Assembly: GCA_964106915.2 (NCBI GenBank)
Contig: OZ066927.1
DNA length: 64,000 bases
Reading direction: 5' to 3' (one strand)
DNA from: Podarcis gaigeae
Lineage: Eukaryota
Shown here: positions 1,454 to 56,989 of the stretch, in pieces
Position numbering within the stretch: position 1 is the stretch's first letter
How the letters are laid out: every line of letters starts with the position of its first letter
Notes under the pieces: generated by a model
Seen by the model: the letters and a program-made list of their open reading frames with translations, nothing else
Databases searched by the model: none
What the model was told of the DNA's origin: nothing
Translations under genes and position numbers: made by a program

Positions 1454-1668
1454 CCCAGTTCTGTCAGCGTGTTCAATATCTCAATGGATGTGAAAATGGC
1501 CATGCTCACCCTGACGATGGAGCGCTTGAGCGTGGCGTTCTCAACCTTCACCAATGCTGATTTTCGGGTCTGGTTTGAGGATAGACTGGTGGTCGCCCTG
1601 TCCAGTGTGAATGCAGAGTTTCTTGGGAAAATCCCCAAAAGTATATCCTGCGAGGCATACAAGTCTGT
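1454..1668 (+). CDS. Modular gene exon A1
   Basis: tttag|CCC..GT|gtgagt; PSSVSVFNIS..WFEDRL..IPKSISCEAYKS; 215 nt, phase 0-2. Confidence 0.85.
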
Positions 1669-4600
1669 GTGAGTGTTGACCTGTTCTTTATTTTGGGGGG
1701 AGGTCCCCTCCAAACATATTTATTTATCCATGTTTTATACTGCTTACTGTGCTATAAGAAAACACCTCTGAGGGATTTACATAAAATCTGGACAGAGACA
1801 GCCTAACCTCTGTCATCTATGCTCTGGTAATCTCTAGGTTAGATTACTTCAACGTGTTAAATGTAGGTCTGCCTCTGGAGATGGTTCAGAAACTTCAGCT
1901 GGTGCAGGATTCAGCAGCGAGCTTGTTACTGGGGCAAGACAGTTTGAGCATATAACATGAATCCTGGTCCGACTGTACTGGCTGCCAAGTGCTTTTTTGG
2001 CTCAATTCAAAGTGCTAGTTTTCATCTATAAAGCCTTAAACAACTCAGGACTGCAGTACCTCAAGGACTGGTTTGCCCCATATGAACCAACCTGGACCCT
2101 GTGAATCATCATCTGAAGCCCTTCTTCATGTGCCTCTTCCACCAGAGGTCTGGAGGGTGGCAACACAAGAACTGGCCTTTTCTGCAGTGGCTGCTTGCTT
2201 CTGGAATGTTCTTTCCAGGAAGGCTCGCCTGGCACCTCAGTTACATATCTTGAGGCAGAAACATTCCTCTTTTCCCAGGCCTTTGTCTAATTAAACAACC
2301 TATGCCCTTTTAAAATGTGTGTGTGGAGGGGTATTGTTTTTGTTTGTTATTATGATATGTATTTATGTGTTTTTATATTGTAAACTTCCCTGAGATCTTT
2401 GGATGAAGGGCAGAATAGAAATTTAAACAACAACAACACAGCAGCAGTCAATGTGATTTCCTAAAAAAACCAGATTAAAACTTAGAGTTGTGTCCCACGT
2501 TAGGCCTATACTCACTAAAATTAATGCACGTTACTAAATTAGCAGCTAGGGTGGGGAACTTGGCTGCAAAGTCAATCCCTGTAGAAGGGTTCCCAGCATA
2601 GCTGTCAATGTTTCCCCTTTTTAAAGGAAAATTCCCTTATTCCGAATAGGATTCCTCGCAAGAAAAGGGAAAAGTTGACAGCTATGGTTCCCAGTCACAC
2701 TTGGTCCCACCAGGATTGAGGCGATGGAGATCTAGCTTGTCCCTAGACTAGCCAATGGAGAACTCCCAACATGCTCATCACTCTTCCCAGAATGAACTGG
2801 GGCAATGAAACTGGTTTAAAAGTGTATATTCTAACGGTGCCTTTTCCTTCTTATCCCAGGATTACTGGGATCAGCAGAGGCTTCTCTGAAATTCCACAGG
2901 AAAGGAAGAAGGATTGTGTCAACTACATTGTTTCTTTCCTAACCCAGAAGTCTCAGACCATTGGTAAAGAACTGGGTTTTAGGGCAGATCTGTCAGGAGG
3001 AAAATAGGAGGAGTGAACAAACAGTGGTTCTCAAACTTTTTTTATCTGGGCCACCCTTTCCAAATAAAAATTTGCTCGTGCCACACCAGAAATTGTTATT
3101 GATAATAACTACATTGGAAAACAAAAAGAAACGACTCCTAGCAGTGCTTGATTTATAACAATTACCTTATAACATGATCATAGGACATCCAGAAAGTATA
3201 AAACAATGCAGCTACATAAGATGAATCATTCCCAAAGTATAATTTTAAATGAGCCTCTTACATGTGTACACGAAGTATGTCTACAAACTCAGTAAGAGGT
3301 GTGAGCTTCCTTTTGCCAGGTAATTTGTGTTAGATCTAATCTGAGATAAACAAACTCTCTAGTCTCATCTCCTCATCAACACAAAGAAGCCTTTTTCTCT
3401 TCTGTTCTTTCGTATTTGTCAGAGTTGAAAATCCCTGTTCACAACATGGGGAACTGTAGAATAGCCAATGTTTGCACAGTGATTCTGGATGACAGCTAAG
3501 ATTGTCCTCAGTATCACTTGCTGCTCTTGCTCTCATTTTGAAAGGTTATCTATCCATATTCTGCAAATAAAACACTGTTTTTTTGATGCTGTACTACACT
3601 ACACTACACTGAAATGTTTAAATGTTTCCTGGATTGACTGTGAATCTTCATGCTGCTCTTCCGATCCTCTTGTGCCACACCAGTGTGGTGCGCCACGCTT
3701 TTTGAGAACCACTGAGCTAAAACAAAGGGGGTTACAGTGGTACCTCAGGTTACAAACACCACGAGTTACAAACACTTCGGGTTACAGACTCTGCTAACCC
3801 GGAAGTAGTACCTCAGGATGAGGAGAGAAATTGTGCCGTGGCAGCAGCAGGAGGCCCCATTAGCTAAAGTGGTACCTCAGGTTAAGAACAATTTCAGGTT
3901 AAGAACGAACCTCCGGAATGAACTAGTTACGTAACCAGAGGTACCACTGTATTTGGAATGCACAGGCCTTAGCTTTTCATTTATTCATTTCTATACTGCA
4001 AATGCATGTGTAAATATATTTATGCAGCATATAAAATCTAAAGTTAAAAATGAGAATTCAATTAAAGTCAAATACATAAAATGTTCAGGCTAACTTGCCA
4101 GAATTTAGTCCTGGAACCTATTTTTGATGCCAGTTATGTGGGCCTTTTGAATCCTGGAGAGGGGAATTACTGCTCTCTCTCCATCAGCAAAATGTCTCAG
4201 GCCGGCCCTGACATTCTCACACTGGGCAGATAAGTCATGACTTTTGCTTCCGTCTCTTCCTTCCAGGTCCTGCCTGCTTTGGCCAAACCACACCCAGAAA
4301 TTGGCTACTCACCTACTTTGGGCAATTCTATACAGAAGTACCATACGTTCAGCTGGTTTCATACTATCGCCAAACATTTGATGCTGTAAGTTAGTGCTTG
4401 CAAACCAGTGGGCATGTTTGAAATTTTGAGAAAGTGATGTGGGTGCTAGTCACAAAATGGCTGCCAAGTGGCATTGTGTGATGGGTGCAACATCTAAAAT
4501 CTGAAAATGCTCTCCCCCTTTTGGTGGAGGTGAGGGAAAGCACCTTTGTGAACCGGAGCTGTGCTAGCATTCACAGAAAGAAGCGCTTTGAACCTCTCTA

Positions 4601-7600
4601 CTTTTGGGAACAGATAGGAGGGAGAATGTCCAGTCCTGGCATTCAGCGACATGGGAGTATGTTCAAGGGGTGTATTCACTGTGGGAGATGCTGAGCCAGT
4701 GCAAGCAGGAAGTGAGCAGAAAGAGCAAACAGTCCCTTCTGACATTCTGACATTCTTATTTCCAGTACGCAGTATTGGATCTTTTAACTCCGATCCAGAT
4801 TGGAGACATGATTGTACATTCAAACACCCTGACCAGCATGGATTTGGCATTGCGCCTTGTCAACTTCTTCCAAGAAAGCAGTGTTGACTTTGTCCAGATG
4901 ATTCTGAAGCAATTCACCAGGGCTGCAATTCAGGTATTTCCCTTGAAACTCTTGTAGAATATTTGGAAGGGGTCCAAGGGTCATCGAGTCCAACCCCTTG
5001 CAAAGCAGGGAATGACAGCTGAAGTTATTGTGATTAATGTTAAATCTCTGTCCCACCATTCCTTCCAATGAATCCCAAGGCAGTAAACAGCAATGCTGTG
5101 GAGGGATTTGCAAGCGAGTGAGTGAGGTGTAGAGGGAGGGGGGGGGGTCAGGGGTGGCGGCCAGGCAAACAGGTAGCCAGGGTTGGCAAGGGGAATGAGC
5201 AGAAGCGATAGCCCCTAGTACTATAAAATTGCCAAGTGATGCTGTTGCCTTGGGTTCTGACCGTTAACTCACTAACTCTAGCAAAACAATCAACTCTTAA
5301 AAACACATGGGAACATAGTTATACAGTTAAGTTTAAATTAGGTATCCTGTCTACAATTAGGGACATTGGAAAAATATATACAGTGGTACCTTGGTTCTCA
5401 AATGCCTTGGTACTCAAACAACTTGGAACCCAAACACTGCAAACTCGGAAGTAAGTGTTCCAGTTTGCGAACTTTTTTTGGAAGCTGAACATGCTCCGTT
5501 TTGAGTGCGACACTTTCGTTTTGAGTGTTGCGCTGAGGTCTTTTTTTGTTATTTATTTTGCGTTTTTGTGGCTCTTTTTTTCTGTGACTGTGTAGAACCC
5601 ATTTCAGCTACTGATTGATTGATTGTGTGTGTGACTGCAGTACATTGTTCATTTCTTTCATTTTATAGATCAGTGGTCTCGTTAGATAGTAAAATTCATG
5701 TTAAAATTGTTGATTTAGGGACTGTTTTTAAAAGTCTGGAACGGGTTATTCCGTTTTGCATTACTTTCTATGGGAAAGCGTGTCTTGGTTTTGGAATGCT
5801 TTTGGTTTTGGAACGGACTTCCGGAATGGTTTAAGTCTGAGAACTAAGGTACCACTGTATAGAGGATTCTGTGCTTTTCATTTAGAAACTGATTCCTTGG
5901 AGGTGTCTTTGTTTAATCTTTCTGCAGCACAAGATGACGGTTCTCCCAAACACCGAAGTTGCGCAGTTGCTCTTGACAAATTACCTGACCCTCGCGTCTT
6001 CTCAAATGGAAACCTACACAGCAGCAGACTGGAACGCCACTTTTCAGGGGGAACTGCGCTTCCTCTGCTCTGTGGTCAACTCAACAACCCTTGCTTACTT
6101 CGCCCCCCAAAACTACAACTCCTTTACCGCCATGTAAGTCTCGACATGGGTTCACTGGGCGCTAGAGGATGAGGGAGGGATTTTGTTTGGTCCATTTCTC
6201 GCTGTGGGCTGAGCCATTTCCAATGCTCATAGAATCTCATAGAAGAATCTTATAGAATATCCTAGAACTCTAGAGCTGGAATCCTGCCCACAGCCGTCAC
6301 GGGTTATCATTTATTATTCCTATGATCCCTGTTTATAAAGCCCAATAAAAAGTTATTGAAATAAAAATTAATTTAAAAAGGAAGGAAAGGAAGGTATTGC
6401 AGATGTGCCAGTGTTATCCACCATGGTTTAATGTTATTAAACCATGGTTTAATGTGATGAGCACAAAGTGGAATATAGCTTGGCAAGCGATAGGTTTGTG
6501 GACTCAGGCCTCCTCTTCCCCACGTGGCTAAGAGGAGGTGTTTGGAAATTTTTATTTGCAGTTTTGTTTAGTACAGCTTGTTTCATCCAAACTGACTAAC
6601 TGGTTAATAGCGATGGTTTATTTGAAGCAAGTTAACTTGAAGCCATGGTTGAAGTTCCCCTTGACTCCAGTGGGAACTTTCCCCCTAATTCAAAGAGCAG
6701 ATACAACCTGCAGATCAGAAGCATAGCAGGAATTTTGTCGCATTAGATAGCTCCTATCTCCTAGACGTGTGCGCAGATTGGAACATGACTCCCAGCGAAA
6801 AAAGAGGCACTTCTCTGGATTTTGCAATGTGGGAAAAATTGTGCATGGAAAAGCATGTGTTTTATGTGAATGATAGGTACAAAATGTACATTTTACTGGT
6901 GAATGCTTTCAAAAGCATTGAAATGTGTGTATATTATGAAAATGGCATGCATAAAAACATACAAAATGCATTTTAAAATGAAATGGGAAGAAATGGCTTA
7001 GAGGGGGCAGAACAGGATGACATCACACAGAAGGGGGATGGAATGAGATGGAACAGCTGGTCATACTCTTGAGGCATATACCATGTGCAACCGGATAAGT
7101 GTGCCCCAGAATCCCTTGCAACATTCCACAGGATGGCAAGCTCTTAGCAATTGTATATGTGTGCCTGTGTGTTGTTTCATCATCTTTGCTATTTGTGTCA
7201 TGACAGTGTTGCTGGGCTTAGTGGAGCACATTCCCAAATGGCAGAACCCTTCAGGAGAGCTGTCGTACTGTGGATCATCCAGAACCTCAAAGACCTAAAA
7301 GGTAACATGACCAAAGAAGCCATGGGGAACATGTAGAGCAATCCCAGAGCCCCAGCTACTTAAAATGTCCCCTGACAAATATCAGCGGCTTCTAGTATAA
7401 TGAAAGGCTCAAATATTTCCTGTGTGCTCTTATTACCCATTCAGAAAAGCCCAGTGAACCATTTTCTGAGTGGATCAAGTTTGCCTGGGGCTCGTTCTTC
7501 AAAGACGCCACCTTGGGAGAAGTGGAATCCATCAAGGAAGACTTCGATCCTGTAGGTTTGCTTTCTTGATGACCAGCAAATTTTGAAAAATGAAGTTGTT

Positions 7601-10600
7601 GCCAAGAAGGCAAGACTCAGGGGCATGTGGGTGCAGAGCAAAAAACTGAGCATTCAGACAGCGACCCCGGGGGCAAAGTTTCATGGAAGGGGCAGCCCCC
7701 TACTTGTAACAAAGCAATAAAACAGCTGTTCTTTGCAAGGAAGGGGGGAATGTGATGGTGCATAAAAATTAATACTATGTTGCATAGTATTAATGATGAA
7801 GATGACAATTCTTCTTTTCTTGTATATGTTCCTTATTGTATATGCTGCTTATCTGAGAGGTTTACAAAATAGAAAACAAATTTGTACCCCAAATTGTGTC
7901 CCAGTAGCCTGAGCTGTTCCCCCACCAAAATATATTACAAAACTAATATTAATTAAATAAATATAAATTAACCCCTTCCCTTTTTGACCAGTATTTTAGG
8001 ATTCAGATTATATTTGTCTAAAGCAAAATAAATTCTACAAACAGGATTATAAATCTTAAGTTTATATTTGATCTATTACTCCCTCTTTACAGCATTCATT
8101 GTTTTTATAGCCTATAATTAAAGCAACCCCCCCACCATCAATTAGTCCCACATTTAGTTTTTCTTAATTCATCTAACCCTTCTTCAATTGATCCTATTTT
8201 CCCTTGAAAAGACTGAACCATTTCATATGTCAATTTATCTGTATGGAAAGCTGATAGATATATTACATCAGATTGTTTGCCCATCTCGCTCAGTATTGTC
8301 TACTCTGATTGGCAGCAGCTCTCTAGGGTCTCAGATTGATGTCTTTCCCATCATTTCCTACTGAGTTTATTTTTAATGGGGGGATGCCGAGGATTGCACA
8401 AAAATTGGCCATCCCTTACTGATATATCAACATAAATTGTATGTTATCCCTATCTATTTTTGTAATTGAGTGAAAAACTATGATTGAGAAGTGTCTATGT
8501 TTTCTAGTTTGCTGTCTTGAACACCTTGAGCACTGAACAGCTGGTAGACGTCATTGCGACCTCGGACGCTCTGGTCAATGTGACAACCCTGAGGCAGGTT
8601 CTGTTGAGCCTAGAGACTGGCCGCTCTGAAATCCCACTTGCAAAGATGGATGTGTTCTTGACAAGGCTCAATTTCATCCTTGAACAGGTAAGTTCCAAAG
8701 AAACAATCAACTTCCAGCCCCTTCAGTGCAAAGCAAACATCCAGGAAGCTTCAGTGGAAACAAGAAGAATTTTTATCGGATCAACAACATTTCTTGGGGT
8801 GGTGTTGGTAATATTTTTGCTCTGCAGATGCCCTCCCATCTGGTGTGTAGATTTGCAATGGCCTAAATCACCCTTTTCCTTCAGAACCTTTCCTCCCCTT
8901 TTTGCAGAAGAACATCCCGGGTATCAGAAATGCCGAGGTGAGGTTGGAACTGCTCAGCACCGTTTTCAGAAACCTGGCCCGCTATTTCCGTAAATTCACT
9001 GCTTTGGACTACCAGAACTGGTTCACCAAGAAGCTGAAACTCCTTTTGCCCAGCATCAATGTGAACCTGCTCCAGATGATTCCTCTCGATGTCAGCTTTG
9101 CCTCCTTTCGCGCCATGTAGGTGTCACCTTTCATTACTTGTCCCATCAATTGCAAGTAGCCCCTTTTGATCAATCAGATTCAGATTTCGTTGGTCAATCT
9201 GCTTCTCACACAATGTTAGAATCTGAGTAGAGTCGAATAGTAGAAACTGGATGTTGGACGATTCAGGACAGACTAAAGAAAACAATTCTTAACACAGTGC
9301 ATACATAAACTATGGAACTCACTCCTGCAAGCAGGCCCAGATTAAGGTGGTTGCCAGAATACGACCCCCCCCAATTCTTCCCCAAAAGGAATGCATTAAA
9401 TAAGGTGCCAGAAAATATGTCACAAAGTCTAACAAATTATTGCATAAGACTAAAATAAAAAAATACTCTGAACACATGCAATTTCACAACTGTCAGAAAA
9501 GCACAAACAAACAAAAAAATTATTTCACCAGACTTAATAAACACACAAAAAGCATGTGCGTTTTCATATTTAAAACTCACTTCCCATTGCTTTTGCTCAC
9601 TTCCTAATGGGTCAGTGATCAACTCTTAGTCTAACTTACTTCACATGGTTGTTGAGAAGATATAGTGCCTTCTATTACCTATTTACGGCAGATAGCTTTA
9701 GCTCTTTAAACTCCAGCTGTCTAGTATTTACTTCTTTTCATTTCTCTCCTGTTCATTTGCAGATTTGGAGGTTTTGATCAGGTCTTCCCAGAGTTACCCG
9801 AGGAGGCATCCATCCAGATCTACAATTTGATGAAGAGAATAATGCAATTCCAAATCAATGCCTCAGGTAACTGCTTCATGGAATTTAGGGGTGGCAGTGC
9901 CTGCTGTGTCTTGGCTGGCTTGGGATGGGGTGAAAGGTAAATTGTTCATGCATGTTGAAGGTGTTGCTCTGGCAGATGAGTGGTCTGTTAAGTGTGGTTA
10001 AGACTATCTGTATAAAGGAATATTTCTGTGTTTTCATTTTGCAAATTTCTGATTTTTAGGGACAGTATTCCCTGGTGCTTACAGCAACAGCCAGAGCTTC
10101 CTGCAACTCCTCTTTTACAGATTTGTGCGTTTTGTGCCTTACGCTGAATTAGCCATCTTATATCCGAATTTTAACGGGGTAAGTGAATATTCAGGATGAA
10201 TTTGCATATTCCCAGAAATGAATTGCTGCTTGATGGTTAAATCAGATAGATAGGTTGTGTTCTAAAAACTCCATTTTCCTTCATTCTTAAAAATAGGTGT
10301 TTGTTTTTTTTTAAAAAATGGTTGATTGGTTTCACTTGACTTTCTTGTAGTTCATGACGATAGCGTTCATGGCACTAAGCTAGAATTAGGTTTCTTTATA
10401 AAAATGCCGACTGAAGAATATGCCTGTCCTTGCTCAACCAAAGCTAAATTTCTTGGATGTCTGCTGAATCTGTTTCTCCATGAATTTTCTCCCTGCCAGT
10501 TTGAAGCCCTCTCTGCCCTGACTCCAAAGCAAATGGGCGCCATGATGGTTTTTACAAACGCATTCAGAAATGAGCGCCTTGCTGTCCAGATCTTGGCAGA

Positions 10601-11142
10601 ATTAGAGAAGCGCCCCCCTGAGGAAATGAGGGACTTCACATCTGAGTTCAATGCTGCGGTAAACCAGGTAATTGTGCTGCGCTCTCACCTGGACAGGAAA
10701 GTATCATTTTCTAACTTGCATCAAATCTTTTCTCCTCTCCCTCCCCCAATCATTTTGCACAGTCAACACTGAACAATTGCACTTTCCACAAAATTCATTC
10801 TCCCTGCACTCTTGAACTTGAGGAAGGTTGTAGCTTTGTGGCAGAAGATATGTGCAATGAGTCATGCGGCCTTTCCCTGGCTGGGAACGGAGAAGATTGT
10901 GGGGTTATTGTGGCAAAATTTGGGGTTGTATACCAGCATACAGTTCTTTGCTGCCGTTTTCATGGGGGGAAACATAGTGGTACAGCAGCGAAAAAGCCAC
11001 ACTGTTCCATAACACAACAGTCACTGCAGTGTGAAGGAATGTTAGAAAGCAGGACAGAAGCAGTGACAAGTGTAATCAAGAAAACTAGAACATTTTCCCC
11101 ATGTTTGAATGCACTCTCAGCATAGACAAGATGGCCTAATGG

Positions 11143-11194
<52 letters not shown>

Positions 11195-14100
11195 ATTCAG
11201 TTTTAAGTTGTACAATTAAATTCAAACAACAGTCATAATCATCAACATTTAGGATTCATTGAATCCTTAGACTCCCTCCCCCTTCCATGGTTTCCATTGT
11301 CAAACTTCATCTACCGCATCATATAATTTCCCATATTTCTTAACTCAATCCATTTTTATCTTAGTTTTTAGTACATTACAAGTGTTCCTAAAATCCCGCC
11401 TAAGTTTTTAGTTGTTTACAGTAAATTTATAAATTTTCCCCATTCCTTATTAAATTCTCCTTCTTCCTGGTTTCTGATCTTCCTGGTCATTTTCGCCATT
11501 TCAGCGTAGTCTGCCATCTTTATCAACCATTCGTCTCTGGTCAGGACTTTATCTTCTTTCCAACTCTGACTCAGTGTCAGACTGCTTCCTGTGTTCCTCT
11601 GTCTCCCCTAAGCTTGTGCCCTTCAAAAGTTCTGGATGATGAATTTCCTCAGTCTTGGCCATCATTGGAGGGACCGGTTTGGGGGAGATCGCACTATGCT
11701 TAGAATTCATCCCATTGTATTTATCCATGAGCTCGTTTTACAGGCAGACAGTTTCATAAAGAGTTCCACTGCAAACTCTCACTGAAAACCTAGAATCTCC
11801 TCACATCTAGATTTGGATTTTGCTGGACAAACCATCACCTGCTAATCTTGCATGTGCCTGGAACACCACCTGTCCATTTCCCTTGCAGAGACAGCTGTTC
11901 GTCCTCCCAGACCTCCGGATCCGTAACTTGATCTTTGAGATGGTCTTCAAGACTCTCAAGTTCAGCACCTTTTCTGCAGATCAATACTCATTCTGGTTTG
12001 GCACTCAGCTCCAGTTCCTCCTGCCATCTCTCAAACCAAAGGACCTGCTGCTGATTCCCCTTGATATTGACTGCCAGTCTCACCAAAATTTGTAAGTCTG
12101 GGTAAACACCCTTGTCTTTTTAGCCTTATCACGGTAGGGACAGTGGAGAAATTGGATTCAGTTCTCATTTAAAGATATTTTAAATTTTCACTGTCTGAAA
12201 CAATGCAAAGCACAGCTGTCCTTTGAAATTTACACTTCTCTGAATTTTGTGGTGCCATTCTCTAGCTAGGTAATGTGTACAAAGAATGCCTATACTAGGG
12301 TAAAGTGTGCATTTCAGAATGCATGTATTAGTGAAGCCAGATGCAAAAATTCCTTTTATTTGGCATAACTGTTTTGCAAAAAATGTGTCTGTTGGGCAAA
12401 ACAGCATGCAGAAAATGTATGTTGGAGAAATTTGCACTAAAATACTGATGATTTTCACGAGGGCCTCTTTAAAAATAGAAAGAAATTGCAAATGATGTGG
12501 CAATGGAATTTAAGAATTGGAAAAAATGAGAAACGAAGAGTCATCGATCCCTACATCCAGATGGTGCTTGATAGCTTGGTCCACCTTAATGTCCCATCCT
12601 GTTTGTCTTTCCTTCCATCGTTCACCTCTGACCTGGTAATGCCTCTCTTTCTAAAAGGGCATGAACTACGCTGGAGTTTTGGGACCCCATTTGATACAAG
12701 CCCTTCACTATCTTTGTCTTCCTCAGGGTGCAAGCGATGGACAAGGTGTTCGATCGTTTCACGGAGGGGCAGAAGAAGGCCATTCATGCGAGGATATTCA
12801 GCTACCTGGAATCTTATCAGGCAGATCAAGGTATCAGAAGACGGGCTCTTTGTTTTTGGAACTTAAGAACATGACCCCAACCGAGCGGCTTACTGGATTA
12901 GACCAGTAGTTCCCAAACTTTTTTGGGCCACTGCCTCCTTGGTTCCATAATCTCATCCCCAGTGCCTTCTACCCTACCCTATAAAAGGCATTATTCAGAA
13001 TAGTAGTTTGCGTGACCCACTAAAGAAGATAATAACACAATGAAATTCAAAACACTAACAGTTAATTGCACAATTATTCGAATGAAAACTATTTAATTTA
13101 ATTCATTCAACAAAACAGATGAACTTGTGAACCCAGCTTTTCAAAGTCTGATACCCATTTACATCTCCAGCGCCCCCTGCTGTCTCCTTGCCTCTTAGCA
13201 CCCCACTAGGTAACCCCACCACCCCACAAGGGGCAGTACCACCCACTTGGTTAAACGCTGGATTAAACCAAAGCCTCATCTTGCTCTATGGAATTCAATA
13301 TAATACAGGAAATAAGAAACAAGAAGAAGCAATAAAAATATAATTAAAAACTGTACCGCATCTAGCACAGCACATTACTACTGATACTACAGGCAGAGAA
13401 ATAAAGAAGCAATCCATGGCAGAAAAAGTTGGGAGCCACTGTTCCAGCTCAAGAACTAAAATTCTTTGCAGGGTGCTGCCCCCACCCCAAACTGCATGCA
13501 GCTTCACTCAGAAGGTCCTCATTCCTCTGCTTTTCTAGGATAATTCAGGTTTGCTTGCCCAGTGATCAAAACTCTTTCTTCTCTTGCAGGGGTCACATGC
13601 TCTCCCAACACCAACAGCAGCCAATGGATCCTCAGCAACTATGGCCAGTTCAGTGCCTTTGCCAGCATCGCGGAGTTTTTGGCAGTGAATGTGAACTTCA
13701 ATGGGGTAAGGGAACCTTTGCCAGGAGGGGTTGTGCTGGGGGAAGAGGCAGATTGTAAGCCCTTGAAGTGGGGGCAAATTGGAGAGACCGGTCCTTGGAG
13801 AGCGGCGCAACTTGACCATAGCATGATGCCTAGGTTCTAAACTCCACTGTCAGAGGTAGCATGTCTCTGGGTTCTAGTCACTGGGAATCTCAGGTGGGGA
13901 GAGTGCTCAGGTCCTGCTTCCCATTGGGATGTTTAGTTGGCCATAGGGGATGCTGGTCTAGGCAGGCCTTTAGTCTGATCCAGAAGGCTCTTCTTATATG
14001 CTTATGATGTTGGGCTAGAGACCCAGCCTGGAGAGCCACAGATTCCCAGGTACACAACATTCTGTTGTGTACCAAGTCTTTTTTAAACATGGGTGGCGCT

Positions 14101-29100: not shown

Positions 29101-32100
29101 CCTTCTACCCACCCCTGATGAAGACCCTCTTCAGAATTTTAAACCTCAGAAATGTGCGTCTGCATTTCTAATTCTCTTTATGATTTTGTCACAGGTTCTG
29201 CCTGCACTCAGGGGGGCTCCACGGACCAAGAGTGGCTGAGCAAATTCTTTGGACCCTTTTCTGCCTATGGCTCCTACTCAGATTTCACTGCACTGAAAAG
29301 CGACTTCCGTGGGGTGAGAGCGGCACAGACTTTGGAGTTTAACGTTTGTGGTGTTCTTGACTCTGGGCTGGTTCGGGCATAACACTAACTCATGGGTCAC
29401 CAATGTATTGCCCTTGAGGCCTTTCCTTGGTGCCCACAAAGCCTCTAAGGGCCCCTCCCCCATCATTGCTCCCCTTGGGCAGTTTAGCTTTAATAAGATC
29501 ACTCAAGGAAGAGTTTGGAAACTTTCACTTCCTTTTTTTAAAACCACAGTTTCCTGTGTCATCCAAACCTTGGTAAACTGTGGTTTAATCTGCACCTTAC
29601 TGACTCAGTGACGATTGGAAGCTTGGGGTGTTTGAAGATTTCTGGATTCTGAGCTTTAGCCTGGTTTCCATCCAACTCCAGCTCTGTGTTTCCAAATGCA
29701 GGTGGATTCCTTGGACCTCTTCTCCGCCACTGCCTTGGCTCAGTTGTCCACTGAAGGTCACACCATTTACAGCAGCTCAGCCATGGTGCTCATCTTCCAA
29801 GCCATCCAGAGAAAGAAGGAGCCAGAGCAATTCCTCAGCACGTACCTGGATGAGTTCAACACCCTGGTGCTGAAGGTAAACAGAAGCTTGTTGACAGACT
29901 TTTCCTCCGGGGCTGGAAACAGACTGATTTTCTGCAGTGTAACTGGAGCACTGGTGGTCAACTCCAATGGGAATGCATGGTCTGTGACCTTTGGGGTAGC
30001 TGGGAATTACTCCAGAGCAGTGGATTTCAAGCTATGTAGCACAACCTTCACCAGGATGGGGCCCTCCTGATGTTTGGGACTCGAGATCACCCTTTCCAAT
30101 TTCCTACAAACTTTCAAAACTCATGTAATTGTCAAGGGTTCTCATTGCTAGCCCATTGCTCTCCATTGTGTGAAACGTTGTCAGCTGATTTCGTTGATCC
30201 TTTTGGGTGTAGTTCCAAATCAGAAGTGCAGGGTCCCTTCATGATACCCACAGTCACACCCCCTTCTAAGATTGTACAACAATCTTATAATATTAAACAA
30301 TTAGAGTTGCATTATAACAATCAATGCAGATCTCCATTGCCCTTCAGCTACATTTACTATTTTCTGTGCGCTTACTTGGGCAAATGGTTTGGAGTGCTCC
30401 AATATCTTCATTTGGAGTGACTTAGATTGTGTTTTCCTTGAAGCTCCATTGTACGTTACAGAACTTACACACCATTCTCTTGAAACTGGAGCACCTAGTG
30501 TTGTCAGTGTTCCTAAATGCTCAGCTTTGGAGCATATGGAACAACTCGTTGGTCTTCTTCCTGTGTGCCTTCTCCAGAGTGACCCTAGGAGCCAATCCTC
30601 AGTGGCTCATTCACCTCCTTTCATTCTGATTGGCTGCAATCGGCACCAGGGGTGAGAAGATTTATTCTCAATGACTTCAAAGCTCCCCTGTTTGGGTAGC
30701 TGTAGGATGCTGGAGACCTTGCTGCAGAAATAGTAACATGTCTTCAACACTTCTGCTTCCACCTAGAACCTGATCTTCAATGAAGTCACACTTATTGCCT
30801 GGCTTTTCCTCTTGCTTCTTCCTCCAGAACCGCGGCTTGTTGAGCAATCCCAAAGTGCGGGACACCATGCTGATGCTGTCGGCAGAGATCATTTTCCCAC
30901 AGATTGCCACCAGTTCCCTGGAAGACACAAACACTTGGTTCCAGAAACTCAACCTCCTCCTCCCGGGTATCAATGGAACAATTCTTGAGCTGCTACCCCT
31001 GGGTATGCCCTGCCCATATTACCAAACCATGTAAGTAGCTGGCATACATTTACCTCAGTAGTTTTGAGGTCCCTTCACATAGTTTAATAACAGACAGAGG
31101 TTACCTCTTGTACACATTGGTGGCTACCACACAATCTGCGTCCTGAGCATCCATCCTGATTTGTTGTGGGGACACCAGATTCTGCTGCCTCGAGCAAGTG
31201 TTATTCCAACACTTTCCAGTGCATTTTACTATAATCTGGGGAAGCGGGTTTATTGTGCAAGATCTTTGACTCAACTTCATTTGAGTACAGTGGTGCCCCG
31301 CAAGACGGAAAACCCGCTAGACGAAAGGGTTTTCCGTTTTGGAGGCGCTTCGCTAAACGAATTTCTCTATGGGGTTGCTTCGCAAGACGAAAAAATCTTG
31401 CGAGTTCCCGCGGGTTTTTTTCGCTCACCCCCCTTTCCTAAGTCGCTAAGCCGCTTACCAGCTGTTCCGCTGATAAGCCGCTTCTCAGCTGATCGCTAAA
31501 AGCCGCTAGACCGCTAATAGCGCTAATCCGCTAAGCTGTCAATGGGCTTGCTTCGCAAGACGAAAAAAACGCTAGACGAAGAGAATCGCAGAATGGATTC
31601 TTTTCATCTTGTGAGGCACCACTGTAACCTTAATTTGAATACCAGTTGCTAGAAACCACAGGAGAGCAGACCGCTCTTGTGGTCGGGTCCTGCTTGCAGG
31701 TTTCCCACAGGTATCTGGGTGGTCACTTTGAGAACAGGCTGCTGGACTAGGTGGGCCACTGGCCTGATCCAGCAGAGCTCTTCTTATGTTCTTATCTTCT
31801 TAATCCCCACCCCCACAGTCTGGAAGCAGCTACACCCAGCTGAGGACACAAAGGCTGGTTTCATCAGACCACCTAGTTCAGCACTCTGGGTTGCATCCAA
31901 TGCTAGTCCTACTCAGAGGAGACTCATTGAAAGTGATGGTCATTTGGAGAACTGTTATACAAGTGATATAATGAAATTCAGTTAGAGGGGATTTGAGAAA
32001 GTCAGTTAACAATGTTATAAAAATTAGGTATTTGAAGAAGTAATTGTTTTTTGTGTTTAGTTTTTTTGTATTGAAATGTGTCTTTATTTTGTGTGTGTTT

Positions 32101-34048
32101 TGTGATGTCATTTTTGTTATAAATGTGGAAAATTAACCAAAAAAGATTGAAGAAAAAAGAAAGAAAAGAAATTGATGGCTGTGACTATCTGAGGTTCATT
32201 CATCTCATTGGGTCTATTCTGAGTAAAACTTAGTGGAACACAACCCTCTATTTCCAAAAAGATTCCAGAGCCAGTTGCAAGCTATAGCCCTCCCAAACTA
32301 TTGTTTGTTCTCTGCACCTTGAGCTCTGAGGTTCTCTGCCTCTGAATATGAGTGCTCCATTTCATTTCCATGGTTCCATAAGGCCTATACTGGAGGAAGG
32401 GCAGGTTGGATGCTAGTAAATGAATATGGTGAATAGGTGGAAAACAAGTGTGACTCAAGCCAATGTGTGGAATTGCTTGTGTTTCTTCCTCAGTGTGAAA
32501 GCGATGGATGGTCTCTACTCAACATTATCAGCCAGGAAGAGGCAAGATGTATATGACTTCCAGAAGACTTATTTAGCTTATCAGTTTGCTGATTCAGGTA
32601 AGGAGCCAAAGGGGCAGGTCTTAGGAATTTCGCCCTGAAACAGGAGTGGGGAATGGACCAAATCCTTATCTCTCCTGCCCCCTGTGGCCAAGCTTGACAT
32701 GGGAGCGTGGTGGTTCACCTGCTCATCATGTGATGCCACAGGTGACCCATTTTGTCACCATAGCTTGAAGTTCAGTCACATGGGCCAAAGTGCTGTGCTG
32801 TGAAAGCCGCAACAACCAGCTGATAGGCAGTACCTGCAAAGCCCTTTTGACAACTGGCTGATATGTGATGTCAGGTGTCGGGCAGGTGGTGGAGTCTTGG
32901 CCAAAACAGTTTCACTGGCCTGGTGGACCTAATTATTGAGCCTTCCCCCAACCTCAACCACTAGTTGCAGAGTGTTTATGAACAGTCTATCTGCTCAGAA
33001 GTTTATCTCTTCGGTGCTTGGGGCAAACTGTTTTGCTGGTTGGAAGAAGGGCAGGGAAGGAGGAGGAGGGTGTCATACACTTCCAACATTATTTCTGCAC
33101 AAATTCATCATTTGTAAGGAACCCAGCTGTGGATTTTTGTCCGTCTTCGCTTGACACATTCTCTTGCCTCCACAGGGTCAGCGTGCGATGGTGGGACTAC
33201 AGGAATCCGAGACTGGCTGACAAAGAATTTGGGGGAGTTTTGCACAGTGGCTAAGCTGAGCGAACTTCAAGCTTTTTACCCAGAACTTGATGGAGTAAGT
33301 TTTTCTCGGCACTGTGCTCCAGAGGGGGCTGCCCCACCTCTTTCCTCTGCAGGGAACAGTAGCAGCCCTGCGCAACAATGAAACTATCTTCATCCAGCCT
33401 AAAATCGCCAAAGGGAGCTGACATATCTTTAAAGGAAAGGATTGATGTTCTCTGCAGTCTCTTTATATTCCACTCTTTCTTCTCTTCTTGAGTTTTCAAA
33501 CTACTGCTTGCTTTAGAAAGTAAATACTTCAGAAATCAACCTGATTGGCATCCAAATTGTCTTTCTAAGTCCGGTGTTTCGTTTAATCAGTAGCAATCTG
33601 GGGAGCAAATTTCTCCCGTAATGGTTCAGTTTTCGATGCTTGAGTATCATCATTAAGCTGAGAAGCAGCAAAACGAAGCTGTGCGTTTTCTTCTAAAGCA
33701 AACACAGATTTTTAACACAGGCTGTGTAATGTTTTCAAGGACAGTACGGACATGGAAAATCACCCATGAATTCTGTCAAAATTTATGCAAGAAGGGTTTT
33801 TTCTGGGTGGGTATCTTCCTTACATATTTTAAAAAGAACACTGTATTTAACCATGTAACAACTATTCTAAATCAAACATGATTTATCTGTGTTTTGGAAA
33901 TGGTTGCTGATATCCAGAGCGCCGTCTCTCTACCCGCTCTTTATTCTGTGGTTGTGCTGATCTGCTCAATTAATAAAATAATAATAACGTTGAAAACAGC
34001 TGAATTGGTATGTTTCATGGTGGTGTTTTCTTTAAGAACAGACAGACA

Positions 34049-34089
<41 letters not shown>

Positions 34090-35658: not shown

Positions 35659-35705
<47 letters not shown>

Positions 35706-38700
35706 TTATTTTTACCCTGCCAATCTGGCTGAGTTTCCCCAGGCACTCTGTGTGGCTCCCAACAGAATTAAAAGCACAATAAAACACCAAACATTAAAAA
35801 CATCCCTAAACAGGGCTACCTTCGGATGTCTTCTAAATGTCAGGTAGTTGTTTATCTCTTTGACTCCACAGGGAGGGCGCCACTACCGAAAAGGCCCTCT
35901 GCCTGGTTCCCTGTAGCTTCACTTCTCGCATGGAGGGAGCTGCCAGAAGGCCCTCAGAGCTGGATGATGCGGAGTGGAGACGCTCCTTCTGGTATACTGG
36001 GCCGAGGCTGTTTAGGGCTTTAAAGGTCAGCACCAACACTTTGAATTATGCTCGGAAACGTACTGACCTATCCGATACAGTGCTTTGAAGCTGGCACCAG
36101 ACTCTGGAAGCATGAATTTTTAAACTGTCTATAAAGGCTCTCACTGATGGGTCGCCAAAAATGGTGAGGGTGCTTCCAGATTTTCCTTGATATCTGATCG
36201 TTTAGTCCAAGACCACCTGATTTTTAGAAAGTGGGTGTTTTTACAGAACGGGGCCACTAGCTAAGAATCTGAACTTTTGTACACACTCAAGGGCAGCCTG
36301 ATTACTAGGAAAAGGTCTAGTTTGTGCGGGTGACAGGAGTGAGCCAGCAATAAATCACACCGAGCAAGTTGGAGTAATTCTTTATTAGCAAAAACAGCAT
36401 CTGCACAGGATTGTCAGGCCTAACGAGCACAGCAGCTCATCTCCAGTAGGTCCCATGCTCCCATGAAGCAGTCACTGAGTCTGAAGGTCCCCACCTCCCC
36501 ACAGCTGCTTAAGTCCCTTCCTCACCAGGGTTTTCCCCAAGCAATTGGAGAGTGTACCTGCATAAAGCTAACTTCTCATGGTCCTTTTAATGCTTCTTCT
36601 TGTTCTGGGAGACCAAGAGGCAGGGGAGCTCATTGCAGCAGGAGGGGGAGACATACATGCCAGACTCTTCTCTGCCTCTTGGCCTCCCTCCTCTCCAGCC
36701 TCCACTTCTGCCTCCACTTCTGGACTCCTCTGCCACAGACTTACTAAACCCTGTTACCTCTTCAGCTTTCAACAGCTCCTCCTTCCAGTCTTCTTCTTCT
36801 CCTCCCTGTGTCCACTTATCATCGTCTCACTAGCAATCCCTGGGTTCTGAGCCTCAGCTGGTTCCTTCCACCATTCTTCTGTGTCCAACCAGTCCATGAC
36901 ATCAGGCAGTAGGGAGAGGAGCACACCTCAGCTGCAGAGCACCTGCTTGGCATGCCAAAGGGCCCAGGTTGGATCACCAGCATCTCCAGGTAGGACTGAG
37001 AAAGAGTCCTATTTAAAATCCTGAGAGTCTCTGCCAGTCATTGTTGATTGTACTGAACCAGATGGACCATTGCCCTGAGTAATGGGCAGCTCTGTATGTA
37101 ACCTGGAATTTGATACAGACACCCCCCCCCATTACTTATATAATAATTATCTTAAATGGCCCATCCCCATCTCTCATGCCTGGTGTGTTCCACGGCACCA
37201 TTACCACTGGGAATAGTGGAAGCCTTCAGGTAAGACAAAGCAAAGCCTGGCACAAAACTTGATAAATGGCATTTGACCGGGTGAATAGACACAAGTGAAA
37301 ACGGATTGCATAGGAAATGATGCAGACTAGGGGTGCACATCCACTTTGGATAAAGTCCAGATATGAAGCTGAAGTATTAGAGGTAGCCAGACCTCCTCTG
37401 GAAATGAAATGGGTCTTGCCATAAGCGGTCCCAAGCAAAGCAGTCTAGTTCCAAAGCTTCCAGTCTTCCTACAGTAATTCCTTATAATTAATCCGCAGAT
37501 GGAGAACCCTTCTGCCCTCAGACCAGCCCAAGCAGCAGACCTAACGGTCATTGCCCAGATGTTGCACAACTCCACCCTGGCCAGCCTGGCTCTTGGGGTC
37601 GTGAAGAACTTTAAAAACTATGGCTCGCTCCATGAATATTTGTCCAGGCTCAAAGGCCCTCCCTGCAAGGTAAGGTTGGGGGGACGGTTCCCATGCCATT
37701 TTGTGATGTGCTAAAATCTATTTCCTTGGCCACAGTCTCACTTGATCTATGTGTTCCAACTTTCTGATACCTCTCCTTGATAAGACAGTGTTCCGTTTTG
37801 TGCCTGTTTTGGATGACTTCTACACAATTTTCTGGTTCATGTTAATGAAGAGCATCTCATAGCCAAACACAGGACAGATCCACACCGTGCATTAAAACAT
37901 ATTTAATGCATATTTAAAGCATGTGTCTTTCCCCAAAGAATCCTGGGAACTGTAGTTGGTAGGGTGCTGGGAATTGTAGCTCTATGAGGTGGGACTACAG
38001 TTCCCAGGATTCTTGACGGGGGGGGGGGGAGTGAGGTACTTTAGATGCAGCCACAGGAGGGGAGAGTGTTCATGTGCTCAGATCCTGTTATGGGTTTCCA
38101 ACGGGCACCTGGTTTGTCACTGTGAGAACAGCATGCTAGACTAGATGGGCCATTGGCCTGATCCAGTAAGCTGTTCTTGTTTTCTTCAATGTATGTCCAA
38201 TATGTGTCCAATGTATGGTGTGGATCTGCCGATAGGCTCTATTTTGTGCTTTCCATCAATGTGTAATCTAGTGGAACGGGCTTGTGAAAGCCAGCTCCCT
38301 CCCTGCATTCATATCTCTTGATATGTTTTGTGACCAAGTCTGTTGAGCCTAAGCATACCACTGGCACACCCTACAGAAATCCTGAAAGCTCTTTCTTTCT
38401 CTGGACTGTTGTGAAACCCACTTCTTTCATCCCTGTGTCTTCCACGCAGAGCTACAAGCCCACAGAAATCTTGTCTATGTGTCAAGGACCTTCCCCACTG
38501 GCTGCTCTCACCCCTGAAAGCCAGCAAGAGCTTTTGGACAATGTATTTCTCTTCTTCAAGAAAGGAGGAGGTTCAATGGACTCCTCTCAGTGGAACGAAG
38601 TCTACCACCTTTTGCTCTCCAACTTCCTACCGACTCTGGGGACACCCCGCCACCCCCAATCATCCTCCAAGGCAGCATGTGAACTCTTCCAATCCACGTA

Positions 38701-41700
38701 AGTCAGAGGTGGCGTAATATGGGTGGGGGGAAAGTGTGCAAAAAAAGAAAAGGCATCTATTACTGAAAATAACGTTCAGAAATGCAGAAGAAAGGGTGGC
38801 TTGTAAAAATGTGCATATTGGGCAAGACTGAGTACAAAAACTAGGAGACATATGTACTAAAACACTTAACAATTTTCATGAGGACTTTTAAAAACAAATA
38901 AAAAAATATTGCAGACTGATGGGGTGGAATTTAAGACTAGGAAAAAATGAGAAATTGAGAGAAACCAACATTGACAGATTCATCCACCCCTATATCATAT
39001 AACCTTGAATTTTGTTGGAAATGATAGGACAGAGAGGGAGAGAGAGAGAGAGAGAGAGAGAAAGAAAGAAAGGGTAAATAGATAAATTTCTGAACAGAGC
39101 CTCCTAGAATCTTATGTTGCTCAAAAGTTCCACTCTAAAAAAATACCTCACCTGCTGCTTCAAAACTTATTTTTTAATCGCAGAATGAAGGAGATTGTCG
39201 CACTTCACCCCAGCCTTACTAAATGGCAGGAAGAACTTGCAGAGGTCAAAAGCCTTTGCCTCCTGGGTGATCAACAACCCAAACCCACAGGTAACCTTTC
39301 ATTACTAAGGGGGAGGGTCTTCCTTCAGTCTGAGGGTGACATTCCCTTCTTAGAGATCCAGTGTGGTGTAGTGGTTAACAGCGGTAGACTCGTAATCTGG
39401 GGAACCGGGTTTGCGTCTCTGCTCCTCCACATGCAGCTGCTGGGTGACCATGGGCTAGTCACACTACTTTGAAGTCTCTCAGCCCCACTCACCTCACAGA
39501 GTGTTTTTTGGTGGGGGAGGAAGGGAAAGGAGAATGTTAGCCGCTTTGAGACTCCTTTGAGTAGTGATAAAGCGGGATACCAAATCCAAACTCCTCCTCC
39601 TCCTCCTCCTCTTCTTCTTCTTCTTCTTCACCAAAACAAAGAAGAAAAGTGAGCAGAACGTAGGAAGTCAGATTGTTGGTCCTCTTAGCTGACATGTTCC
39701 CAAACTGATACTTCCTCTCTTTCCATTTGCAGCAGCAACACAAATCCCTGAAAGAACGGCAAATCACCCCCCTGGAGGTGCCAAAACTCAGAACGTTGCA
39801 AATGTCACAGGTGATGCCCCTGGGCAATCTGCGTCTCACAGTCCTGGAGATGCCACCACTCTTCCAACCGAGGTCCCTGCAGCTGCCACAGGGGCCATCC
39901 AGGGAGGTGCTTCAACCCTCTTCCCTGGGAGAGAGGCTGGAGGCATCTCTGGCAGTGCCCGAACTCTCCACCCAGGAGGCAACACAGGACGGACAACTGG
40001 ATGGTCTGCATCTTGCACTTCAAGGCAGACTACCACTCCCACCCTTGGAAGTGCCATAGGCAATACCCCTGATGTCACAAGAGGCACCACAAGCAGCGTC
40101 CCTGCTGCTCCTACAACACACAGCCCTGAGAGTGCCACGGGCCACATCCCTGGAAATTCTACAGGCACCATCCCTGGTGGTGGTACAACTCACATCCCTG
40201 GAGGCACAACCAGCAATGTTACTAGAGGAGCCTCAACTCAAATCCCTGGTGGAGCAACAAGCAACATCCCTGGTGGTTCTGCAACCAACATCCACGGTGG
40301 AGCAACAAGGAAAATCCCTGATGCTGCTGCAACTCACATCTCTGTAGGAGCAACAGGCAACACCATTGGTGGAGGTGCTGCAATTGTCCTCCCTGGTGGA
40401 GCAACAAGCAACATCCCTGGTGGTTCTGTAACTCACATCCCGGGAGCTACTGAAACTTCAGTTCATGGAAGTTCAAACAGCAACATTCCTGGAAGAACTA
40501 CAGCTCCCATTCCTGGAAGGGATACAGCATACAGTCAGGGTATCCCGGGAGCAACTTCTGTCGCTGCTGGCAATACAACTCACAACCCTGGAAATGTCTC
40601 TGGAGGTGCCCCTGCATATGCATGGACTCACCCAGTCCTATTTTTCACCTGCCTTCTCCTCCCTTGCTTTATTGTAACCATTTCCCCATAGTGCACCTCT
40701 GTTTCACAACCCACCTGCAAATTTGCCTAAATAAGAGACACTCTTTGGAATCAGGCTACAGTGTTGTGTATCAGTGTCTTTCCAGATAAGTGGTAGCAGT
40801 TTTCTAGCATCCTGCTACTCTGGAATCTTGAATCTGTTGTGTTTGATTACACAGAATATATTTATCATGCAATAAATCATCCGTCCAGCCAATGGTGCAC
40901 ATCAAAGTATTCTGGTATCCTTCTAGCTTCACATTACCGTGAAATTTGTACAAAATGGGATTGCCATATTTCAAACAGTGAAGATCTGGACAGAAAAGTT
41001 GTTGAGCTTTTTTTTTTGGGGGGGGGGACAAAATCTTTTGGAAAATCGGCAAAAGTGACACTGCCAACATGGGCTGCCATAGATCTGGATTTTCCCGGAC
41101 ATTCCCACGATTTTCGTCCAGACACTGCTGCCAACTGCAATATTCCGTGCATGTCCGGGAAATTCTGGCCTTATGGCAACCCCAAATAAAGATGTAGGTT
41201 GTTGTGTGAAAAGAGGACCATGTGTGGCTTCTGTAGAAAGCATTTCCCCTTCTTTTCTTCATAAATCTTATTTTCCTTAGTAGCAGTAGAAAGAAAGGTT
41301 TGGTGGAAGCTCTATCATCTAATATTTAATATTTATTGCTGAACATTCCTTATTTCAGAACATCTCAGTTTGGAAAAGCAGCTGGACATTGCTGGGTGCC
41401 CCCCCCCCACCATTCTGTTCCTCTCCCCTGACCCCTAACAGAGTTTAGCCCACATAGCGAGTTAAAGTTAGGCAGTTCAGTGGGACTTATTAGGCATAGG
41501 GACACACAGTTATACCAAGTCAGATCATTGGTCCATCTAACTCAGTATTGTCTCCAATGACTGGCAGAGGCTCTCCAGGGTTTCAGGCAGGGAGTCTCTC
41601 CCCACCCTATCTGGATGTGAAGCAGGGGCAGTGATGGGTGTGGCCTAAAGAGAGCGGGTGTGTCTGGGAAGAGGGTGTGGTGTAGGAGAGTCCTGAGGGC

Positions 41701-49099: not shown

Positions 49100-49600
49100 A
49101 GAAAACACGGACGCCCAGGTCACATCGGGAGCCCTCATTAAGGAGGTGAGGGGGCTACTCTACATTATTTATCTCCGCGTTCCTCTCTCTCCTTCGTCGG
49201 TTTGCGGCAGTGTGGCGGAAATAGCTTATCACACAGTGTTGTACGAGCATATACTTCCTCGGCGAAGCTTTACGGCAGTGTGGCGGAGAAGGGAGATGCG
49301 AAGATGGCTACGGCTGTGTCGCCCTTCAGCGGAGTCCTGCAGTTGACGGACCTGGACGACTATATCGGGCCGTCGCAAGTGAGTGGGGCGGGGGAGGAGG
49401 AAGAGAGAAAGGGGAGGCAGGAGAACGAGAAGGATACAGGCATTTGGGGCCGGTCCCGTGTCGTATTCTTTGCAAACCTTACAACAACCATGTGAGGTAG
49501 GCCCGCAGTAGCAGCACACGCATGCGCGCCCATTGCTGAGGCTCAGAGTGAGCGGCCCCAATATGCGGGGCCAGGGTGGTGTCATGATTAGAGGGTCAGG
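49100..49600 (+). promoter_or_regulatory. CIAO3: CpG-rich promoter / first-exon region of CIAO3
   Basis: Visibly elevated CpG density. ETS-like ACTTCC at 49253, YY1-like AAGATGGC over the start codon, NRF1-like CGCATGCGC at ~49519. Confidence 0.75.
49304..49378 (+). CDS. CIAO3: CIAO3 exon 1
   Basis: aagATGg; [25 protein letters not shown]|gtgagt. Confidence 0.95.
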
Positions 49601-49870: not shown

Positions 49871-49915
<45 letters not shown>

Positions 49916-56983: not shown

Positions 56984-56989
56984 AATAAA
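56984..56989 (+). terminator. Candidate CIAO3 poly(A) signal (others at 57913 and 58417)
   Basis: AATAAA about 145 nt after the stop. Confidence 0.45.

What the first reader, a model, noticed from the sequence alone, without database searches (positions are those of the whole stretch)
1454..39290. Giant protein built from ~10 tandem copies of a four-exon, ~200-aa module
Seen: 38 exons fall into four classes in strict order. A is 197-215 nt (248 in A10), with WF..L..L.SIN...L..IP..ISC. B is mostly 104 nt. C is mostly 119 nt, with GxAC..WL..NFG.F..YxDL..F.G. D is 159-180 nt, with LT..QLA..F..FN. Junction phases 0-2-1-0 are invariant and the 1901-codon frame has no stop. Modules are highly diverged in sequence and I see no homology between their introns, so the expansion is old and maintained. 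Many B and C exons are invisible in the ORF track. Knowledge: human mesothelin is only ~620-630 aa and, with otoancorin and stereocilin, forms a GPI-linked alpha-solenoid family; MSLN/MSLNL lie beside CIAO3 in human. Inference: this is a much longer, probably poorly annotated non-mammalian member, or a separate family, forming a long alpha-helical rod.
Basis: partly seen in the sequence, partly recalled or inferred. Interest (0 to 1): 0.8.

Follow-up and report, generated by a model that had tools for sequence, protein, structure and literature searches.

The report
Giant mesothelin-lineage repeat protein of lizards
This lizard gene encodes a very large extracellular protein made of twelve copies of an undescribed helical domain, apparently as one secreted and two membrane-anchored forms, and its relatives indicate that the cancer antigen mesothelin is only the tail end of a much bigger ancestral vertebrate protein.

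Summary
Confirmed: 38 exons, phases 0-2-1-0, 1,899 codons, no stop. The genome is a Podarcis-like wall lizard. Modules 1-9 are positions 4-12 of a twelve-module array whose order is shared by lungfish, amphibians, turtles, birds and marsupials. (1) Reading through the C9 donor gives a conserved Cys-capped stop (33381), a secreted ~2,450-aa form. (2) Splicing on through D9-A10-B10 reaches two duplicated last exons (T1, T2), each a Gly/Thr-rich stalk plus GPI-type signal; A10-B10-T1 splicing is seen in RNA of a related species. In turtles and marsupials the same gene continues into a true mesothelin domain; squamates and an ibis lost it here. So this is the mesothelin gene lineage, but the module is not a mesothelin domain: no Pfam, PDB-sequence, profile or fold match, although AlphaFold models it confidently as all-helical (pLDDT 97). 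The C9-D9 junction rests on homology and public gene models, not on RNA seen here. Function is inferred: a matrix- or mucus-binding scaffold, secreted or tethered.

The parts
1454..4933 (+). Module at ortholog position 4: A1 1454-1668, B1 2860-2963, C1 4267-4385, D1 4766-4933
5928..8687 (+). Position 5 (most divergent): A2 5928-6133, B2 7207-7301, C2 7445-7551, D2 8508-8687
8908..10667 (+). Position 6: A3 8908-9116, B3 9763-9866, C3 10060-10178, D3 10500-10667
11889..14647 (+). Position 7: A4 11889-12091, B4 12727-12830, C4 13590-13705, D4 14489-14647
15645..21238 (+). Position 8: A5 15645-15844, B5 16531-16631, C5 19092-19210, D5 21071-21238
21560..24840 (+). Position 9: A6 21560-21771, B6 22946-23049, C6 23955-24073, D6 24673-24840
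25129..27100 (+). Position 10: A7 25129-25325, B7 25919-26022, C7 26306-26424, D7 26942-27100
28158..29875 (+). Position 11: A8 28158-28360, B8 28947-29050, C8 29195-29313, D8 29702-29875
30828..33294 (+). Position 12, last module of the conserved array: A9 30828-31030, B9 32494-32597, C9 33176-33294 (carries a Cys found only in this module)
33295..33381 (+). Read-through of the C9 donor (GTAAGT): VSFSRHC... then stop; C-terminus of the secreted form
33382..34016 (+). Putative 3' UTR of the secreted form; non-coding block conserved with Pogona including AATAAA at 33972
37499..39290 (+). Membrane-form exons D9 37499-37669, A10 38450-38697, B10 39184-39290 (degenerate module, extra cysteines)
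39733..40691 (+). Alternative last exon T1: 319 aa Gly/Thr/Ala/Pro/Ser stalk, 8/16-residue period, hydrophobic GPI-type end; AATAAA at 40871 and 41185
   Evidence: (spliced to B10 in run X1)
42020..45819 (+). Alternative last exon T2, paralog of T1: 1,266 aa stalk plus hydrophobic end; AATAAA at 46596
   Evidence: (DNA in three organisms; no RNA depth in X1)
49304..56839 (+). Neighbour gene CIAO3/NARFL (synteny marker, not part of the gene)
   Evidence: same neighbour

Best explanation
One gene, the squamate ortholog of the long vertebrate mesothelin-lineage gene beside CIAO3. A signal peptide and Cys-rich cap (upstream of the window, shown in orthologs) lead into twelve ~200-aa, twelve-helix modules, each probably closed by one disulfide, packing into a continuous alpha-solenoid. 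3' end choice sets the fate. Polyadenylation after exon C9 gives a secreted ~2,450-aa protein capped by an extra Cys pair. Splicing from the same donor gives GPI-anchored forms of ~2,920 aa (T1) or ~3,860 aa (T2) that hold the array off the membrane on a short or long, probably O-glycosylated stalk. In turtles and marsupials the membrane form ends in a mesothelin domain; squamates deleted it and expanded the ancestral GPI-signal exon into the stalk. Shown: exons, orthology, conserved secreted end, A10-B10-T1 splicing, fold confidence. Inferred: C9-D9 splicing, T2 use, GPI addition, disulfides, rod shape. Most likely role (about 0.5): a multivalent scaffold that binds mucins or other gel glycoproteins at an epithelial or gland surface, secreted into the gel and tethering it to the cell, as proposed for otoancorin, stereocilin and mesothelin.
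For: Position-specific clades for all 12 modules from lungfish to lizard. 25 fetched proteins end VS[FY]..C and all have a Cys in the last C exon, a column with under 3% Cys in other modules; the P. raffonei RefSeq model (96% identical) ends there; UTR and AATAAA conserved with Pogona. Donor is GTAAGT in all seven species read. The first module-type exon after it is a phase-0 D exon in turtles, ibis, gecko, Pogona and Podarcis, with no signal-peptide/cap exon found in between. Joined public models in bilby, Tasmanian devil, two turtles, two geckos and a rattlesnake. Spliced RNA contig A10-B10-T1. Turtle and ibis last exons share phase, opening motif and ending with T1. AlphaFold two-module model pLDDT 97, pTM 0.91.
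Against: No RNA seen across C9-D9 (outside my one read-laying run); P. raffonei annotation splits D9-T1 off as a 461-aa gene. T2 has no RNA depth in the one RNA run. T1 match to the turtle last exon is modest (4-35 of 2,000 shuffles as good) and T2's is not significant alone. No ligand, tissue or localisation data; bird MSLNL expression reports were not shown to concern this gene. Public gene models are not independent proof of splicing.
Confidence: 0.72

Rival explanations
1. Two genes: a secreted twelve-module gene ending at 33381 and a separate small GPI-anchored mucin-like gene (D9-A10-B10-T), the remnant of a downstream mesothelin-like gene with its own first exon.
For: P. raffonei and Pogona annotations stop at the read-through end; P. 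raffonei has a separate 461-aa model starting at the ATG that opens D9. D9-A10 resembles amphibian downstream modules (56-76 bits) far more than modules of the twelve-array (under 13 bits). C9-D9 is the longest intron, 4,204 nt.
Against: No signal peptide at D9 and no cap exon found in six loci by an HMM that finds them upstream in turtle; the downstream part always starts with a D exon in the right phase; invariant donor; joined models in seven species.
Confidence: 0.15
2. The module is a very remote homolog of the mesothelin/otoancorin/stereocilin helical repeats, so the whole protein is one continuous mesothelin-superfamily solenoid.
For: Language-model neighbours include stereocilin and otoancorin clusters at 0.84-0.86 (lead level only). 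Best profile match to the tail has probability 9.8%, pairwise E 0.003. Both are helical solenoids in one polypeptide.
Against: No Pfam hit in 120 two-module segments, no PDB sequence hit although the tail profile finds mesothelin at E 5e-71; mesothelin chains are absent from the listed top rows of three fold searches. Module helices reach about 20 residues, mesothelin has 24 short helices (PMC10035497).
Confidence: 0.25
3. The protein works mainly in mucosal defence or cell spacing (microbe binding, anti-adhesive coat) and not in anchoring a host gel.
For: Copy number after module 12 varies widely (3 to 31 modules in relatives), stalks were gained independently in squamates and a danio, and neighbouring modules share only about 23% identity, which fits many different ligands.
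Against: The twelve-module array has kept number and order for over 400 million years, more like a structural ruler than an arms-race receptor. No direct data either way.
Confidence: 0.25

Closest known systems
Mesothelin / MSLNL (Pfam PF06060)
   Same: Same gene lineage: orthologs in turtles and marsupials end in PF06060 plus a GPI-type tail and lie just upstream of CIAO3; a loach protein named mslnb carries 11 modules; elephant shark and lamprey proteins have modules plus the domain.
   Different: The lizard protein lacks the mesothelin domain, is 4-6 times longer, consists of a different repeat, and has a conserved secreted isoform.
Otoancorin and stereocilin
   Same: Large GPI-anchored helical proteins of the same superfamily, proposed to tie acellular gels to epithelia (PMC2628672); a lamprey relative has a weak Stereocilin hit in its tail, below cut-off.
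   Different: No hit of the module to the Stereocilin Pfam model; full-length otoancorin and stereocilin were not retrieved or compared directly.
GPI-anchored or tethered mucins
   Same: T1/T2 are single-exon low-complexity stalks, 24-26% Ser+Thr, hydrophobic end.
   Different: Gly-rich with an 8/16-residue Ile/Asn period, derived from the gene's own last exon; two alternative lengths.
Immunoglobulin mu secreted/membrane switch (own knowledge)
   Same: Same logic: a donor inside a composite exon is either read through to a short secreted tail with a cysteine, or spliced to membrane exons.
   Different: Analogy of mechanism only; no sequence relation; regulation untested.
Uncharacterized RefSeq/GenBank proteins (e.g. 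Podarcis raffonei LOC128401859, Xenopus tropicalis LOC101733326, bilby LOC141495590)
   Same: Direct orthologs, already predicted in databases.
   Different: Unnamed, often split or fused; no paper on them found.

Membership tests
Mesothelin family (protein domain level) | PF06060 mesothelin domain in the protein | tested here: not met
   Tail HMM finds 17 exons in turtle but none in the window, Pogona, gecko or P. raffonei loci; no Pfam hit in squamate orthologs
Mesothelin family (protein domain level) | Module fold matches the solved mesothelin solenoid | tested here: inconclusive
   Not in top rows of Foldseek or VIA searches, best Z 7.8 to unrelated solenoids; no direct pairwise superposition possible
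Mesothelin family (protein domain level) | Profile similarity of module to mesothelin tail | tested here: not met
   hhalign probability 0.6% whole, 9.8% best window
Mesothelin gene lineage (orthology) | Orthologs carry the mesothelin domain in the same gene model | tested here: met
   Bilby, devil, Pelodiscus, Mauremys models; 63 of 202 module-bearing proteins have the tail
Mesothelin gene lineage (orthology) | Position next to CIAO3 | tested here: met
   Window, Pogona, turtle, ibis; not in the gecko Sphaerodactylus
Mesothelin gene lineage (orthology) | Orthology to human MSLN versus MSLNL | not tested
   No human sequence fetched; from memory MSLNL shares CIAO3's strand, as this gene does
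Mesothelin superfamily | N-terminal signal peptide | tested here: inconclusive
   Outside the window; present in turtle, gecko, frog, lungfish and marsupial orthologs
Mesothelin superfamily | C-terminal GPI signal | tested here: inconclusive
   Hydrophobic ends without cytoplasmic tail on T1 and T2; no GPI predictor available; absent from the secreted form
Mesothelin superfamily | Binding to mucin or gel glycoprotein | not testable with these tools
   needs binding assays
Stereocilin / otoancorin | Stereocilin Pfam domain (PF21058) | tested here: not met
   Otoancorin_N (PF28491) was not among the hits and may be newer than the library copy
Beta-solenoid repeat (stalk) | Confident beta-helical model of the 8/16-residue repeat | tested here: inconclusive
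   pLDDT 36, pTM 0.22 on an 11-row alignment

The most novel reading that the evidence does not exclude
The ~200-aa module is an undescribed extracellular alpha-solenoid domain family, at least as old as lampreys. The ancestral mesothelin gene was a giant array gene with a secreted/GPI switch conserved for over 400 million years; the array, not the mesothelin domain, is the part that squamates and some birds kept, while placental mammals kept only the tail. Mesothelin would then be a remnant spacer-and-anchor unit, which could explain its weak knockout phenotype.
Probability: 0.5. Interest if true: 0.82.

Novelty: new variant of a known kind. Interest (0 to 1): 0.68.

Why it matters
The normal function of mesothelin, a major cancer-therapy target, is unknown and knockout mice show no phenotype (PMC2628672). 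This locus suggests that function should be sought in the full-length ancestral protein, which survives in frogs, turtles and marsupials and can be studied in Xenopus, axolotl or zebrafish. It adds a new, confidently modelled extracellular repeat domain with more than 200 unannotated carriers, a deeply conserved secreted/membrane switch that explains why databases split or fuse these genes, and a clear case of an anchor exon expanding into a mucin-like stalk and then duplicating.

Tried and rejected
Pfam on single exons and on 120 two-module segments: nothing credible. Word search with the A-exon alignment: blank because of the length window, so the one large search was used. PDB sequence and fold searches: only generic solenoids. 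Extra or hidden modules in the long introns B5-C5 and C9-D9: none. Signal-peptide or cap exons before D9: none. The idea that the repeat is really D-A-B-C with a D-like cap or tail start: scores too weak, although 51 of 65 arrays end at C before the mesothelin tail. Beta-solenoid stalk: not supported by AlphaFold. Search for a squamate mesothelin domain elsewhere: nine hits, turtles and marsupials only among those named, but it also missed placental mesothelin, so the blank means little. Gene contexts for frog, bilby, devil and rattlesnake were not on record. Literature searches found no description of the array. The careful tree did not finish; the quick tree is reported.
Full report
OBSERVATION. 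I rebuilt the model from the window. All 38 exons have AG/GT ends; classes run A-B-C-D with phases 0-2-1-0; the frame is 1,899 codons without a stop. Modules M1-M9 score 84-172 bits against an HMM built from the others, at 22.6% mean identity; M10 is degenerate. A six-frame scan finds no further modules. The 38 exons were searched exon by exon, by reference. The joined protein was not sent to any database search or folding tool; it was built only inside scripts for comparison with proteins already fetched, and structure prediction used the turtle ortholog instead. No human sequence was fetched, and the window has no N runs.

RELATIVES. Word and family scans left the protein open, so an HMM of nine A exons was run against the large library: 235 proteins at E up to 0.001, with up to 30 matched stretches each. 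Named ones come from lamprey, elephant shark, sharks, bichir, teleosts, lungfish, frogs, salamanders, turtles, snakes and lizards; a second search added an ibis, a plover and marsupials. No placental protein was among the named hits. The closest is Podarcis raffonei LOC128401859, 96% identical, so the window is a wall lizard or near kin. Window M1-M9 match positions 4-12 of a twelve-module, ~2,440-aa protein. In a quick maximum-likelihood tree each position forms its own group across lizard, turtle, ibis, bilby, frog, axolotl and lungfish (the ibis numbering is shifted by one because its model lacks module 1), so number and order predate the lungfish-tetrapod split. About 700 residues, including the signal peptide seen in orthologs, lie upstream of the window.

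SECRETED END. Most twelve-module orthologs stop just after the last C exon. In the window this is read-through of the C9 donor: VSFSRHC and a stop at 33381. Twenty-five fetched proteins (some are isoform pairs) end this way, and all carry a cysteine about 25 residues earlier, at a column that is under 3% Cys in other modules; I infer a capping disulfide. The next ~600 non-coding bases are conserved with Pogona (66% over 447 columns) including AATAAA at 33972. There is no hydrophobic tail, so this form is predicted to be secreted.

MEMBRANE ENDS. The donor is nevertheless GTAAGT in all seven species read. In turtles the next recognisable exon is a D exon, followed in register by more modules, 17 exons of a mesothelin-containing tail, a GPI-type last exon and CIAO3. 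An HMM of signal peptide plus cap finds those exons upstream of the array but not between C12 and D. Public models join the two parts in bilby, Tasmanian devil, Mauremys and Pelodiscus (with PF06060), and in two geckos and a rattlesnake (without it). A 4,419-aa toad protein begins at a D exon, so such amphibian giants may be 3' halves of still larger proteins. In the window B10 (phase 1) joins in frame to two paralogous last exons, T1 (319 aa) and T2 (1,266 aa), which share acceptor region, repeats, ending and some UTR. Run X1, from a related organism, has a 380-nt contig with A10 to its last base, then room for exactly the 107 nt of B10, then T1; T1 is covered into its UTR and T2 has no depth. 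T2 is present as DNA in three organisms and open for at least 470 codons in P. raffonei. The C9-D9 junction lay outside my single read-laying run and is not shown by RNA.

ORIGIN OF THE STALK. The turtle last exon is phase 1 and reads A(P/T)HIP(G/R)RATTYAKDH then a hydrophobic stretch; the ibis exon is alike. T1 and T2 open with ATQIPE, their repeat consensus is TT(H/N)IPGG(A/T), and they close with YAWTH and a hydrophobic stretch. The T1 end beats shuffled turtle ends in all but 4-35 of 2,000 trials; T2 alone is not significant. I infer that the stalk is the ancestral GPI-signal exon with its opening octapeptide amplified: 73 aa in a gecko, about 246 in Pogona, about 1,130 in the rattlesnake, duplicated in Podarcis. 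The ibis kept D-A-B-C, one scrap of a mesothelin exon and the last exon, an independent loss. A danio protein has modules plus a Pro/Thr stalk and no mesothelin domain. AlphaFold gave no confident fold for the stalk (pLDDT 36).

THE MODULE. Two turtle modules with a 120-row alignment model at pLDDT 97, pTM 0.91, all helical, twelve helices per module; the high pTM suggests fixed packing between modules. Two cysteines, at the end of A and the start of C, are 96% and 91% conserved. There is no Pfam family and no PDB sequence relative, whereas the tail profile finds mesothelin structures at E 5e-71. Fold searches return only generic ARM/HEAT/PPR solenoids, best Z 7.8, with no mesothelin chain listed; the best Atlas match is an unnamed chordate 'threonine-rich GPI-anchored' cluster (TM 0.62; also top by features). 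Profile comparison with the tail peaks at 9.8% probability. The module is best treated as an undescribed domain; remote kinship to the superfamily is not excluded.

HOW IT WORKS. Shown: architecture, orthology, the conserved secreted end, one spliced membrane end. Inferred: alternative polyadenylation against splicing at C9 selects secreted or GPI-anchored product, and last-exon choice sets stalk length. For function I commit to a multivalent scaffold binding gel or mucus glycoproteins at an epithelial or gland surface (about 0.5), by analogy with mesothelin-MUC16 and the proposed role of otoancorin and stereocilin (PMC2628672). Weak leads: genes called MSLNL are enriched in chicken oesophagus (PMC12665336), found in chicken tracheal vesicles (PMC8780788) and quail seminal foam (PMC12853081), and high in mouse olfactory neurons (PMC4295871); I did not show that the bird gene is this one.

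VERDICT. A real and more interesting gene than reported: mesothelin lineage by orthology, not by domain. The proteins already sit in databases as uncharacterized predictions, but I found no paper describing the domain, the fixed twelve-module array, the switch or the losses. New variant of a known kind; interest 0.68.

Noticed in passing
window 49304-56839 (+): CIAO3/NARFL gene, apparently complete, with AATAAA near 56985.
   Followed up: partly
window 60796-60892 (-): Last coding exon of a HAGH/HAGHL-like gene, tail to tail with CIAO3 (weak HAGH_C hit, E 0.0027).
   Followed up: partly
L001 28492-35121: In the gecko Sphaerodactylus the downstream neighbour is a phosphoribosyl pyrophosphate synthetase gene on the opposite strand, not CIAO3: synteny broken there.
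   Followed up: no
L006 11809-17654: Olive ridley turtle has a retroelement with gag-like and pol-like ORFs in the intron after the B7 ortholog; absent from the flatback turtle locus by intron length. Observed only.
   Followed up: no
L008 45038-48020: Ibis keeps one extra module, one remnant mesothelin exon and the GPI-type last exon before CIAO3.
   Followed up: yes
proteins P0001, P0002, P0011, P0019: Proteins with 19-31 modules, several with a recent ~410-aa two-module period (P0002, P0011 and P0019 are amphibian; P0001 has no named species); if joined to the twelve-module part they would reach 7,000-9,500 aa.
   Followed up: partly
proteins P0193, P0194, P0195, P0196, P0168: Shark, chimaera and medaka models with two module-plus-mesothelin units in tandem, suggesting tandem gene duplicates fused by annotation.
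   Followed up: no
protein P0164: A Pogona ortholog is labelled 'ATP-binding cassette sub-family A member 13' in UniRef, which looks like a misannotation.
   Followed up: no
L002 20075-20218: Pogona D9 ortholog has an in-frame deletion of about 14 codons but keeps its acceptor and frame.
   Followed up: partly
window 39358-39600 and many introns: Very high-copy interspersed repeats (depth spikes) account for the intron-intron matches.
   Followed up: no
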